Shown here: positions 36,401 to 39,400 of the stretch, one piece after another
Layout: each line of letters begins with the position of its first letter
Numbering within the stretch: position 1 is the stretch's first letter
Assembly (NCBI RefSeq): GCF_009834535.1
Contig: NC_045714.1
Coordinates: 14,942,001 to 15,006,000 of the forward strand
Direction of reading: 5' to 3'
DNA: 64,000 nt
Origin: Camelus ferus
Lineage: Eukaryota
Position numbers and translations under genes: made by a program
Notes under the pieces: generated by a model
Database searches by the model: none
Told to the model about the DNA's origin: nothing
Seen by the model: only the letters and a program-made list of their open reading frames with translations

Positions 36401-39400
36401 AAGCCTCTGGGGGGGTCCCAGGACACTTTGGAAGAACCCGTCCAGGTTTCCAGTGATCTGCTTATTTTGGTGGCTTTCCTTCCATTTACATGGAGAATTT
36501 TAAATTCCCTTCAAAGATAAACGCACTTAGGTAAAAGCACGAAAGGAGGAAGCCGCCCAGACGCGGCGGTAGGTGCCACACGTGGTACGAGGCAGGTCAG
36601 CGTGCAGTCCGTGGGCGCCTGGGCCCAGGGCTGGACAGGCCGCCTCAGCCCTGGTGAGCAGGGCAGGGGCGCCTGGCCTGGAGCCCACTCACCTCGGGCA
36701 ATCACCTTGATGGCCACTCGGGCCGTGTCCTTCCAGAGCCCCTCGAAGACCTCCAGAAGTAGCCAGCCCCAAGCTTCCGGCAGAGCGTGAACTCCTCTCG
36801 CGGCCTCTCCCAGTCGTCGCAGAGGGGCAGGGGCTCAGGCACTTGCTGCAGGGATCCCTGCCGGCGGGTCAGGAAGTCCCCACTCTGACCCCAGCAGGGG
36901 GAGCCCCTGGTCTGCCCTCAGATGTAGGGCCACGTTCTGCTTGGGAGCGTCCCAGTGTCCAGTGTGTGTGCCAGGGGCTGCCCCCAGCCTGGTGGACCCC
37001 TACTGTGTCCTGTAGACAAACACCACCCCCACCACCTGCTCCGGGCCGGTGACATTGCCCTGAGTACCACTCACACAAAACTCCTGTCCAGCTGCTGGCT
37101 GGGACACATGGCCCCTGTCGCCTGTCCCCAGGCTCCCACCCCCCCAGAGAGAGTCAGGACGTGGCAGAAGCATAGTTGACCTCTCACCTGCCCAGGGGTG
37201 AGAGTGACCGGGCAAAGGAGGGCGTGTCCCCTGCCCACCCTCCTGCTGCCACGCACAGCTCTGTCCAAGCACAGCTCCCTAGGCTGAGTCTCCCTGAGTG
37301 GGCCCCGCCAGTCAGGGTATCAGGACCCACCCCTGCCCAAGGGCTGTGTCCCTGAGGAGGGAAGAGCTGTAGGTGGGCAGGGGCCGCGGCAGGGCCTGGC
37401 CGGGGTGGGGCGGCCCTACCTTACTGCAGGGCGAGGTCAGCCGCAGGCCATGGGACAGGCTCTGGGCCTTGTGGTGGTCCAGGAGCTCTGGCAAGCTGCA
37501 GAAAGACACGGCCTCGTTGAGGTGCAGCTGGCCGGCCCGCCGCCAGATCCTGTAGTGCCGCACAGCCTGCGCGTCCTGCACTGGATGGAGGGGGGCGCTC
37601 ATGAATAGGCACAGGGAGGGGCCGCAGGCGGAGGCTCTCCCAGCCAGGGAGGGAGAAACCTGCCAGGACCTCTGGACAAGCGCCCACCCGGGGGTCAGAG
37701 CTCCCCGAGCAGCGCGGGGGCAGGGCAGGCCAGAGCGGCCGGGCTCTCTGCATGCAAGAAGGGTTTAGGGACAAAAAGCCCCAAAATCAGGCATGGGGGC
37801 GCTACAGTGTGGACGAGGTGGGAAGGGGGTACCTGAGAGGACGTAGTCGGCGCCTGGCTTCTCGCTGACCCTGAGCAGGAAGGCCCCCCGCTCCTTGCCC
37901 TCGGCCTGCAGTCGGTGCGAGGCTTCCGAGCGAGAGATTCGGCCGAAGAACCACCTGCAGGGCGAGGATCCTGAGCAGTGAGGACCCCACCCGTGCCCCA
38001 ACCCTGCCCACCTGGAGTCCCAGCCCCCAACTGACCCTCTGCCTCCTCACGCCCCCAGCCCTGACCCGCAGCCGCCCCCCGACACTCACTGACCTCGAGT
38101 CCTCTTCTTTGCCGGACACCAACCCCAAATGTCCCACGTGGCTGGTTCTGGACACAGGGAGAGGCCCCTCCCACCACCCTGCGCAGTGTCCCACCTACGG
38201 GGACAGAGCTGCCCCACTCTGTGGGTACAGCAACCCCCCAAACCTCGCATGTGGCTTTCTAGCCACACTCTTAGGCCATGTCACGCTGTGACTCTGTGGC
38301 CAGCTTCTGCACCCAGGCCACAGTCATGTTGTGCTCTAGTGCTGTGGGACTGGGACTGAGTGTCTGAGACACATACGTGCACCCACACGCGCACACGTGC
38401 GATCACATGCATTCTCAGACACCCGCTCCCAGTGCGGGGCGGGGGACAAGCCCTGGACTCTGGAGGGCAGGGTGGGGCCTGTGGAGTTCCCCAGGTGGCC
38501 TCTGCTGCCAGCTCCACTGCCCTCTGCACCCCCAACTCCCTCAGGCCCCGCTGGAATGCCAGCCCCTGCAGGGAAGATCACGGCCCGGCACAGAGCCCTG
38601 TGGGGTCCACATCCCACCCCCAGCTGACCCAGCACCTCTGGAATCTCCCCCGTTTGCTCTTCCCCCCAACTGTCCTGCTACCTTCCCACTTCTCAAATGT
38701 GCTGAGTTCCCAGGGCCTTGGGCCTTTGCACCAGCCACGCCAGCCCCTGCACTACTGCTGTGGAGGCCCCAGTCTGCAGCTGGCTCCTTCCAGGAGGAGG
38801 TGCCCTGCGTGTGGCCACTGTCTGCCCTGCACACAGCAGGCAGTCAATCAGTGGTGCATGGGGAGAGGTGCTGGGTCACGGGGGCGTGCAGCAGGTCGTG
38901 GGGATCCCTCCTCTGGACCCTCCCTACCCAGAGCTCAGAGAAGCACCTCAGGTCGTCGTGCACATAGCCATGCCAGGCTGCACCCCTCAGGCCCGCAGCT
39001 GCCTCTGGGAGCCACCTTGCCGGTGCTGGGGCAGCCATGCTGGGACAGGGAGTGTCTGCAGCCCACACCGCATGCAAGTGTGTCGCAATGGCCCTCCCAC
39101 TCCCTCTGACGAGGCCACCCATCTGGTTTCGTGTGTTTGGAAGGTGAGTCAAACTCCTCTCCCCAAAAGGCCCAGTCTCTGCCTCGGACCCCTGTGCGGA
39201 CCCCATCACTGTCAGCTGGCCGCCCTCTCTGGCGCCTGGCACTGTGAAGTGGTCCCAAGGGAGCCCGAGGAGGGGCCGTAGCCTCAGCAGCCCCCGTCCC
39301 CAGGTGTCAGGCAGCAGAGCCCAGTCAGGTATCCCAAGACCAAGATGGTGGGTCCAGCCACATGGGGGCACAGGGGGACAGAGCCACAGGCCCCTCACTC

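What the first reader, a model, noticed from the sequence alone, without database searches (positions are those of the whole stretch)
36693..36845. PTK6 has a single frameshift in the kinase glycine-rich loop
Exon 4 is 153 nt and reads CTT GGG GCT GGC TAC TTC TG GAG GTC TTC GAG GGG CTC TGG: the last Gly codon of GxGxFG is one base short (~36755). The shifted frame stops at TGA 36704-36702, upstream of four more exons, so the mRNA is a predicted NMD target or encodes an SH3-SH2-only protein. All other exons, splice sites and motifs are intact. Inference: either a recent or polymorphic loss of this epithelial-differentiation kinase, or an assembly error. The site is not a clean homopolymer contraction, which slightly favours a real lesion.
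Basis: partly seen in the sequence, partly recalled or inferred. Interest (0 to 1): 0.72.

Follow-up and report, generated by a model that had tools for sequence, protein, structure and literature searches.

The report
Real PTK6 frameshift in two-humped camels

Summary
Observation confirmed. PTK6 lies on the minus strand as 8 exons with canonical splice sites. Exon 4 (36845-36693) is 153 nt, not 154: the third Gly codon of the glycine-rich loop reads TG (36755-36754), and the shifted frame stops at TGA 36704-36702.

The window is 100% identical to GCA_009834535.1 (BCGSAC_Cfer_1.0). The domestic Bactrian PacBio HiFi assembly GCA_048773025.1 is 99.6% identical and differs 30 nt away in the same exon. 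It has the same complex lesion, GGGG to TGG. Two dromedary assemblies, alpaca and horse keep a 154-nt exon with TTC GGG GAG. Assembly error is therefore very unlikely, although this assembly has other suspect frameshifts.

The domestic Bactrian copy has also lost its start codon (ATG to GTG). Within living Camelus, PTK6 has 12 nonsynonymous and 1 synonymous change, against 153:127 on background branches (Fisher p=0.008). This fits drift.

No cryptic splice combination restores the glycine-rich loop. The mRNA is a predicted NMD target, or encodes a 218-aa SH3-SH2 stub.

Verdict: a young unitary pseudogene of the Bactrian lineage, a new member of a known kind. Fixation in populations is untested. 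The scan had not noted this before on other DNA. In passing, PTK6 is also wrecked in beluga and dugong.

The parts
39557..39786 (-). PTK6 exon 1, coding part (ATG 39786-39784); SH3 domain
   Evidence: Pfam SH3_1 E=2.6e-9; 230 nt in all five camelid sequences and horse
37833..37954 (-). PTK6 exon 2 (SH2, N-terminal half)
   Evidence: Pfam SH2 E=1.8e-10
37420..37580 (-). PTK6 exon 3 (SH2, C-terminal half, and linker)
36693..36845 (-). PTK6 exon 4: 153 nt instead of 154; linker end, strand beta-1, glycine-rich loop, VAIK lysine
   Evidence: the downstream part matches human PTK6 structures 6cz2/5da3/5h2u/5d7v
36754..36756 (-). The lesion: ancestral TTC GGG GAG is now TTC TG GAG (net -1 nt plus G>T) at the third Gly of GxGxxG (codon 202)
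   Evidence: Alignment of window, L002, L003, L005 and L006. Gly in 63 of 65 other orthologues
36702..36704 (-). Premature TGA in the shifted frame (codon 219). It lies 9 nt before the exon 4 donor and 507 nt of mRNA before the last exon junction
   Evidence: arithmetic from the exon coordinates
35929..36090 (-). PTK6 exon 5 (kinase N-lobe)
34690..34871 (-). PTK6 exon 6 ([11 protein letters not shown])
   Evidence: best solved-structure match is PTK6, 95 bits against 80 or less for other kinases
33804..33957 (-). PTK6 exon 7 (activation loop Tyr, APE)
33403..33587 (-). PTK6 exon 8 with stop TGA 33405-33403 (C-terminal regulatory Tyr in ...RYENP)

Best explanation
This is a real germline lesion. 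In the lineage leading to the two-humped camels (wild C. ferus and domestic C. bactrianus), the run GGGG spanning the third glycine codon of the PTK6 ATP-binding glycine-rich loop became TGG. This happened after the split from the dromedary. The change shortens exon 4 from 154 to 153 nt and shifts the frame.

Shown: the lesion, its presence in two independent assemblies, its absence from outgroups, and an excess of nonsynonymous change.

Inferred: translation from the normal ATG stops 17 codons later, at codon 219 in exon 4 of 8. The mRNA should therefore be degraded by nonsense-mediated decay. Any protein made is a 218-residue SH3-SH2-linker stub without a kinase domain. No alternative splice choice can give back the glycine-rich loop, so PTK6 kinase activity is lost and the gene is a young unitary pseudogene drifting neutrally. 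The loss is tolerated because PTK6 is not essential (null mice are viable) and the paralogue SRMS next door looks intact.
For: (1) The window is 100.000% identical over 20,717 nt to GCA_009834535.1, which is named BCGSAC_Cfer_1.0 in a preprint.

(2) L002 comes from GCA_048773025.1, a de novo hifiasm PacBio HiFi assembly of a domestic Bactrian camel (PMC12905343). It is 99.605% identical to the window, with 55 substitutions and 10 indels. It carries exactly the same TTC-TGGAGGTC and differs from the window 30 nt downstream (AAG vs ACG). It is therefore independent data.

(3) Two dromedary assemblies (GCA_036321535.1, GCA_000803125.3), alpaca (GCA_048564905.1) and horse have a 154-nt exon 4. Both dromedaries and alpaca read TTCGGGGAGGTC.

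(4) The glycine is conserved in 63 of 65 other orthologues.

(5) There is a second hit: the start codon is GTG in L002.

(6) Crown-Camelus substitutions are 12 nonsynonymous to 1 synonymous, against 153:127 elsewhere on the tree (Fisher p=0.008). This is compatible with neutrality (binomial p=0.15) and unlikely at omega 0.3 (p=0.0014). Several changes hit near-invariant sites: E71G, V213A, V62M, V295A.

(7) No C. ferus or C. bactrianus PTK6 protein sits in the 90% cluster that holds the dromedary and alpaca proteins.

(8) I enumerated all AG...GT choices around exon 4. There are 27 frame-preserving combinations, and none retains the loop. Skipping exon 4 gives a stop.

(9) Tolerance of loss: PTK6-null mice and cells are viable and show enhanced colonic barrier function (PMC4847919). 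The SRMS kinase exons in the window are open with intact motifs.
Against: No raw reads were inspected. Each species is represented by one assembly, so fixation is unknown, and gene flow between wild and domestic Bactrian camels could spread a single allele.

This assembly has other single-base frameshifts flagged by first readers. One of them (OR51E2) was judged an assembly error by an earlier follow-up, so the prior for error was not small.

Apart from this lesion, the gene in the window is fully intact, so the loss must be recent. The selection test rests on only 13 substitutions counted by parsimony. NMD and absence of protein are inferred, not observed. Gene callers still report products of 532 aa (this assembly) and 423 aa (the HiFi assembly) at the locus, and I could not retrieve their sequences.
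Confidence: 0.85

Rival explanations
1. Assembly or consensus error: the animal has an intact 154-nt exon 4, and the missing base is an artefact of this assembly.
For: Other single-base frameshifts in conserved genes (CD19, SLC4A2, SERINC4, CCDC89) are flagged in this genome. An earlier follow-up called the OR51E2 one an assembly error. The window also has a private +1 G in a G-run at 40027-40033, relative to four other camelid sequences. The lesion touches a G-run.
Against: The identical complex change (deletion plus G>T) is present in an independent HiFi/hifiasm assembly of another animal of another taxon, which differs from the window elsewhere in the same exon. The same sequence context is assembled intact in two dromedaries and alpaca. 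The nearest N run is more than 15 kb away.
Confidence: 0.03
2. Real but segregating: the frameshift is a common null allele in Bactrian and wild camels, possibly shared by introgression, and is not fixed. Functional PTK6 alleles persist in the populations.
For: Only two haplotypes were seen. The gene is otherwise intact in the window, which fits a young allele. The start-codon loss is seen in only one of the two.
Against: Both haplotypes sampled from two taxa carry it. They differ by 0.27% locally, so the allele is not very recent. They share three further derived nonsynonymous changes at sites conserved or biased in other mammals, plus one reversion. All changes after the dromedary split on this lineage are 8 nonsynonymous to 1 synonymous.
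Confidence: 0.12
3. Retained function without the kinase: the truncated SH3-SH2 product, or an isoform from a cryptic acceptor, is made and kept as an adaptor or inhibitor. This would be analogous to human ALT-PTK6.
For: Human ALT-PTK6 is a 134-aa SH3-only splice product. It binds PTK6 substrates and modulates growth (PMC3068133). SH3 and SH2 are intact in the window. Cryptic in-frame AG...GT combinations exist, for example an acceptor at 36752-36751 giving a 58-nt exon.
Against: The premature stop lies 507 nt of mRNA upstream of the last exon junction, so NMD is expected. In the domestic Bactrian camel the start codon itself is lost. Nonsynonymous changes are no rarer in SH3-SH2 (I104L, E71G, M1V) than in the kinase part. 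The cryptic acceptor is a GAG with a poor pyrimidine tract, and it also existed in the intact ancestor. ALT-PTK6 acts on full-length PTK6, which is absent here.
Confidence: 0.05

Closest known systems
PTK6 / BRK (protein-tyrosine kinase 6), e.g. dromedary XP_010995317.1 and human PTK6 (PDB 5d7v, 5h2u, 6cz2)
   Same: Same locus (SRMS - PTK6 - PPDPF). Same 8-exon structure and phases. SH3-SH2-kinase architecture. 99.1% DNA identity to the dromedary locus. The best solved-structure match is human PTK6.
   Different: Exon 4 is one base short at the third glycine of the ATP-binding loop, so the kinase domain cannot be translated from the normal start.
Lineage-specific unitary pseudogenes in mammals, e.g. 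the dead HELZ2 in camels noted on this same window
   Same: An orthologous, syntenic, single-copy gene is disabled by a small lesion that is shared between sister species, with relaxed selection.
   Different: This one is much younger. It has one frameshift (plus a start-codon loss in one species) and is otherwise intact, and it is restricted to the two-humped lineage.
ALT-PTK6, the human exon-2-skipping isoform (PMC3068133)
   Same: A PTK6 product truncated by a frame change that keeps the N-terminal interaction domain(s) and lacks the kinase.
   Different: ALT-PTK6 is a regulated splice product made alongside full-length PTK6, is 134 aa, and has SH3 only. Here the truncation is genomic, would give 218 aa (SH3 + SH2), has no full-length partner, and is probably removed by NMD.
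PTK6 remnants in beluga and dugong
   Same: PTK6 is disabled at the same syntenic locus. In sirenian models the same third glycine of the loop is replaced: R in dugong, V in Amazonian manatee.
   Different: These are far more eroded. Beluga has missing exons 1-2 and several frame changes, with HGD and DLG in place of HRD and DFG. Dugong has an in-frame stop before VAIK, and HQD. They are independent events.

Membership tests
PTK6 orthologue | SH3 - SH2 - tyrosine kinase domain order | tested here: met
   Pfam on the exon translations: SH3_1 (exon 1), SH2 (exons 2-3), PK_Tyr_Ser-Thr (exons 5-8)
PTK6 orthologue | Closer to PTK6 than to any other kinase | tested here: met
   Solved-structure search: PTK6 chains are top for exon 4b and exon 6, at 95 bits against 80 or less for EGFR/Src. 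Exon 1 retrieves PTK6 proteins at 76-84% identity.
PTK6 orthologue | Conserved synteny SRMS - PTK6 - PPDPF and conserved exon structure | tested here: met
   Gene calls in the dromedary locus L001 and in L002-L006. SRMS exons lie at 45557-42299 and PPDPF at 30818-31534 in the window. Exon lengths equal those of horse apart from exon 4 (one base short) and exon 8 (185 vs 188 nt).
PTK6 orthologue (functional kinase) | Uninterrupted reading frame through the glycine-rich loop GxGxxG and the kinase domain | tested here: not met
   The exon 4 frameshift at codon 202 leads to a TGA at codon 219. No frame-preserving splice alternative keeps the loop.
Unitary pseudogene (lineage-specific gene loss) | Inactivating lesion at the orthologous locus, verified in independent sequence data | tested here: met
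   The same lesion is in GCA_009834535.1 and in the HiFi assembly GCA_048773025.1. It is absent from 2 dromedaries, alpaca, horse and a suid-like transcript.
Unitary pseudogene (lineage-specific gene loss) | Relaxed purifying selection after the loss | tested here: inconclusive
   The Bactrian lineage has 8 nonsynonymous to 1 synonymous change, and crown Camelus 12:1, against background 153:127 (p=0.008). But there are only 13 events, counted by parsimony, and the dromedary (intact) also shows 4:0.
Unitary pseudogene (lineage-specific gene loss) | Fixed in the species; no intact copy elsewhere in the genome | not testable with these tools
   Only one haplotype per species was reachable. Whole genomes and read sets are not searchable here.
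Unitary pseudogene (lineage-specific gene loss) | Transcript degraded or no protein | not testable with these tools
   NMD is predicted from the position of the stop only. A search for camel ORF fragments in read-assembly collections found none.

The most novel reading that the evidence does not exclude
PTK6 may be a recurrently discarded gene in mammals. On this reading it is dead in cetaceans and sirenians, probably decayed in a seal and a gundi, broken in two-humped camels, and perhaps already drifting in the whole genus Camelus, including the dromedary, whose intact-looking copy has 4 nonsynonymous and 0 synonymous changes, two at near-invariant sites. That would give a series of natural knock-outs of a cancer drug target. 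It would also give a closely related intact/null species pair (dromedary vs Bactrian camel, which can hybridise - my own knowledge) in which to read out what the kinase does in skin and gut epithelium.
Probability: 0.4. Interest if true: 0.6.

Novelty: new member of a known kind. Interest (0 to 1): 0.42.

Why it matters
PTK6/BRK is a much-studied epithelial kinase and a drug target. What it does in normal tissue rests largely on one mouse knock-out line (my own knowledge; the papers read here use PTK6-null mice). A verified natural null in a large mammal, with an intact copy in its sister species, is an independent test. It can address whether the kinase is dispensable for skin and gut differentiation, epithelial barrier and DNA-damage responses.

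It also corrects annotation. Gene models at this locus in Bactrian and wild camels that give full-length products must rest on a silently repaired frame.

Methodologically, it shows that in an assembly with known false frameshifts, a neighbour-gene look-up across sister assemblies can separate real lesions from errors.

Tried and rejected
1. I searched the protein collection with the exon-4 ORF (window:36514-36834:-), hoping to find ORF fragments from camel read assemblies that would show the lesion at read level. Only two unrelated weak hits came back.

2. Exact look-ups of alpaca PTK6 (P0269), hippo (P0215) and sheep (P0004) found no record. Alpaca was reached instead through its PPDPF protein. 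The outgroups used were horse and a suid-like transcript.

3. The PPDPF search first returned retrocopy-like proteins of C. ferus (P0282, P0286). I set these aside as not being the syntenic gene.

4. Literature searches for PTK6 with camel, pseudogene, gene loss or cetaceans found no prior report. The 462-mammal gene-loss paper has no supplement held.

5. Splice rescue is rejected. Exon 4 skipping gives a stop. The internal GT at AAG|GTGATT gives the wrong phase. None of the 27 frame-preserving cryptic combinations keeps the glycine-rich loop.

6. Ribosomal frameshifting: I saw no slippery heptamer by eye at TAC TTC TGG AGG. I did not pursue this further.

7. Gene conversion from SRMS as the source of the exon-4 substitution cluster is rejected. 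SRMS reads [23 protein letters not shown], which does not match the derived camel residues.

8. I could not retrieve the 532-aa and 423-aa products called at the locus in the two Bactrian-lineage assemblies. The 532-aa length equals 83 codons from an upstream ATG plus 449, which requires one inserted base, so I infer a repaired model.

Full report
**The observation**

Read on the minus strand, 36600-36950 shows an acceptor cag followed by CAA GTG CCT ... CTT GGG GCT GGC TAC TTC TG GAG GTC TTC GAG GGG CTC TGG ... ATT GCC CGA G and a gtgagt donor. Stop-to-stop frames and peptide landmarks place a complete PTK6 gene on the minus strand:
- e1 39786-39557 (ATG at 39786)
- e2 37954-37833
- e3 37580-37420
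- e4 36845-36693
- e5 36090-35929
- e6 34871-34690
- e7 33957-33804
- e8 33587-33403 (TGA 33405-33403)

All borders are AG/GT.

Exon 4 starts in phase 0 and must hand over to exon 5 in phase 1, so it should be 154 nt. It is 153. The missing base is at the third glycine codon of the glycine-rich loop, where TG sits at 36755-36754. Translated as it stands, the protein reads ...LGAGYF, then 17 wrong residues, then TGA at 36704-36702. This gives 218 residues.

Pfam finds SH3 in exon 1, SH2 in exons 2-3 and the tyrosine kinase domain in exons 5-8. Human PTK6 structures are the best solved matches for the part of exon 4 after the break and for exon 6.

**Which genome this is**

I fetched a dromedary PTK6 protein (P0270) from a protein search seeded with exon 1. 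Its locus L001 (GCA_036321535.1) aligns to the window at 99.115% over 26.4 kb. The window is therefore a different Camelus.

The 90% cluster that holds the dromedary and alpaca PTK6 proteins has no C. ferus or C. bactrianus member.

To reach other camel genomes I used the neighbour gene PPDPF, which lies about 2 kb downstream of PTK6. Its 115-aa protein (P0292) is identical in several camels. An exact look-up returned three loci, and two further PPDPF proteins gave a second dromedary and alpaca.

L004 (GCA_009834535.1) is 100.000% identical to window 20818-41534. A preprint names that accession BCGSAC_Cfer_1.0. From the name and my own knowledge, this is the wild Bactrian camel reference.

L002 (GCA_048773025.1) is 99.605% identical to the window. 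It is described in PMC12905343 as a de novo hifiasm assembly of PacBio HiFi reads from a domestic Bactrian camel.

**Is the lesion real?**

In the six-way alignment of exon 4:
- The window and L002 both read TTC-TGGAGGTC.
- Both dromedary assemblies and alpaca read TTCGGGGAGGTC.

Horse also has a 154-nt exon 4. The suid-like transcript aligns codon for codon with the intact camelid sequences.

L002 is independent data. It differs from the window by 55 substitutions and 10 indels over 20.7 kb, and by one base 30 nt downstream in the same exon (AAG vs ACG).

A consensus error would have to produce the same deletion-plus-transversion in two technologies and two animals, yet spare the identical context in three other assemblies.

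The caution was warranted. First readers flagged single-base frameshifts in CD19, SLC4A2, SERINC4 and CCDC89 in this genome, and an earlier follow-up judged the OR51E2 one false. The window itself has a private extra G in a G-run at 40027-40033. For PTK6, however, I put assembly error at about 3%.

**What else has happened to the gene**

I built codon alignments of the five camelid sequences, a suid-like transcript (L007) and horse (L008), and mapped changes by parsimony.

| Branch | Changes | Nonsynonymous : synonymous |
|---|---|---|
| Stem shared by the two Bactrian-lineage sequences | I104L, H172Q, V213A, T292A, plus the lesion | 4:0 |
| Window only | E71G, K212T | 2:0 |
| Domestic Bactrian copy | M1V, R425G, one synonymous change | 2:1 |
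| Dromedary stem | V62M, D182E, V295A, E410K | 4:0 |
| Living Camelus, total | | 12:1 |
| Camelus stem | | 14:8 |
| Alpaca | | 7:11 |
| Suid | | 52:34 |
| Horse | | 43:42 |

M1V in the domestic Bactrian copy is ATG to GTG at L002:18983-18981, a start-codon loss.

With 1029 nonsynonymous and 318 synonymous sites:
- The crown differs from the background (153:127) by Fisher p=0.008.
- The crown fits neutrality (p=0.15).
- The crown is unlikely under omega 0.3 (p=0.0014).

Several replaced sites are almost invariant in 65 other orthologues: E71, V213, V62 and V295. The broken glycine is G in 63 of 65.

The numbers are small and the method is crude. I read this as support for drift in the Bactrian lineage (8:1, p=0.018 at omega 0.3). 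For the dromedary it is only a hint that constraint was already weak (4:0, p=0.06).

Four of the seven substitutions on the window's lineage since the dromedary split, besides the lesion's own G>T, fall in exon 4 or its first codons. I have no explanation for this cluster beyond chance. SRMS is not a plausible conversion donor.

**Timing**

The lesion is shared by wild and domestic Bactrian sequences and absent from the dromedary. Locally, the two Bactrian sequences differ by 0.27% and each differs from dromedary by about 0.67% in substitutions. At this locus the lesion therefore arose in roughly the first 60% of the time since the dromedary split. Absolute dates would rest on published split times, which I did not check here.

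**Mechanism and consequences**

Shown: the frame is broken inside the loop that clamps ATP phosphates.

Inferred, from established rules:
- The stop lies 9 nt before the exon 4 donor and 507 nt of mRNA before the last exon junction, far beyond the 50-55 nt limit. The transcript should undergo nonsense-mediated decay.
- Any protein made would be SH3-SH2-linker plus 17 junk residues.

I enumerated every AG...GT pair within about 150 nt of exon 4 that would keep exon 3 and exon 5 in frame without a stop. Of the 27 combinations, none retains LGAGYFG. Skipping exon 4 runs into a stop.

Re-initiation at the next in-frame Met would lack the loop and the VAIK lysine.

A kept adaptor role, by analogy with human ALT-PTK6 (PMC3068133), is possible. 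It is disfavoured by the start-codon loss in the domestic camel and by the even spread of replacements along the gene.

Loss should be tolerable. PTK6-null mice and cells are viable and even show better colonic barrier function (PMC4847919). The SRMS kinase exons next door are open, with [22 protein letters not shown] and APE, and none of the window-vs-dromedary indels falls in them.

**Comparison with what is known**

The gene meets every test for being the PTK6 orthologue except the one that matters for function, an uninterrupted kinase reading frame. As a kind of event it is an ordinary lineage-specific unitary pseudogene, like the HELZ2 remnant noted on the same window but much younger.

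I found no paper in the searchable library that mentions PTK6 loss in camels or in cetaceans. Absence from that library is not proof of novelty.

**Beyond the finding**

PTK6 models labelled low quality or truncated in other mammals look decayed. At DNA level:
- The beluga locus lacks exons 1-2. It changes frame within exons 4, 5 and 8, and has HGD and DLG in place of HRD and DFG.
- Dugong has an in-frame stop just before VAIK, G to R at the same third glycine, and HQD.

Each rests on one assembly. PTK6 may therefore be lost repeatedly, notably in aquatic mammals. That makes the camel case less surprising in itself but part of a more interesting pattern.

**Verdict**

Fixation, expression and phenotype remain to be tested. 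Interest is moderate.

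Noticed in passing
L002:18981-18983 (minus strand; orthologous to window 39784-39786): In the domestic Bactrian HiFi assembly the PTK6 start codon is GTG instead of ATG. This is a second inactivating change, not present in the window, dromedary or alpaca.
   Followed up: partly
window 40027-40035: The window has 7 G after an upstream ATG (40035-40033), where the domestic Bactrian camel, both dromedaries and alpaca have 6. This private +1 puts that ATG in frame with PTK6 and explains the 532-aa gene call at this locus (83 + 449 codons, which also needs one repaired base). 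It may be a homopolymer error or a private variant.
   Followed up: partly
L009:6001-10824 (beluga, GCA_002288925.3) and L010:3001-10647 (dugong, GCA_030035585.1): PTK6 is clearly broken in both. Beluga lacks exons 1-2, changes frame inside exons 4, 5 and 8, and has HGD/DLG. Dugong has an in-frame stop before VAIK, G>R at the same glycine-loop position, and HQD. Protein models of blue whale, Amazonian manatee, harbour seal and gundi also lack the HRD arginine. This suggests recurrent PTK6 loss, especially in aquatic mammals.
   Followed up: partly
L009:1-6000 (beluga): A DUF5581 (FNDC11-like) gene sits only 2.3 kb upstream of the PTK6 remnant, and no SRMS-like kinase exon is detected in between. 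In camels SRMS lies next to PTK6 on that side. SRMS and the 5' part of PTK6 may have been deleted together in this whale.
   Followed up: no
L003 / L005 (dromedary PTK6), codons 62, 182, 295, 410: The intact dromedary gene has four nonsynonymous and no synonymous lineage-specific changes. Two are at sites nearly invariant in 65 other orthologues (V62M, V295A). This hints that constraint on PTK6 was already weak in the genus.
   Followed up: partly
window 36722-36845 (PTK6 exon 4): Six of the twelve exonic differences between the window and dromedary fall in this 153-nt exon: H172Q, D182E, the lesion (2), K212T and V213A. This is about four times the local divergence. No cause was found, and SRMS is not a matching conversion donor.
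   Followed up: partly
window 42299-45557 (minus): The kinase-family neighbour SRMS looks intact in the window. Its exons are open with [22 protein letters not shown] and APE, and all window-vs-dromedary indels fall outside them. It is a possible back-up for PTK6.
   Followed up: partly
whole genome (earlier notes): First readers flagged single-base frameshifts in CD19, SLC4A2, SERINC4, CCDC89 and OR51E2 in this same assembly, one of them already judged false. Each needs the same cross-assembly check before being read as gene loss.
   Followed up: no
P0282, P0286 (C. ferus proteins): Two PPDPF-like proteins, annotated on other C. ferus contigs, are diverged copies of PPDPF (55-86% identity to the last exon). 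They look like expressed or annotated retrocopies.
   Followed up: no
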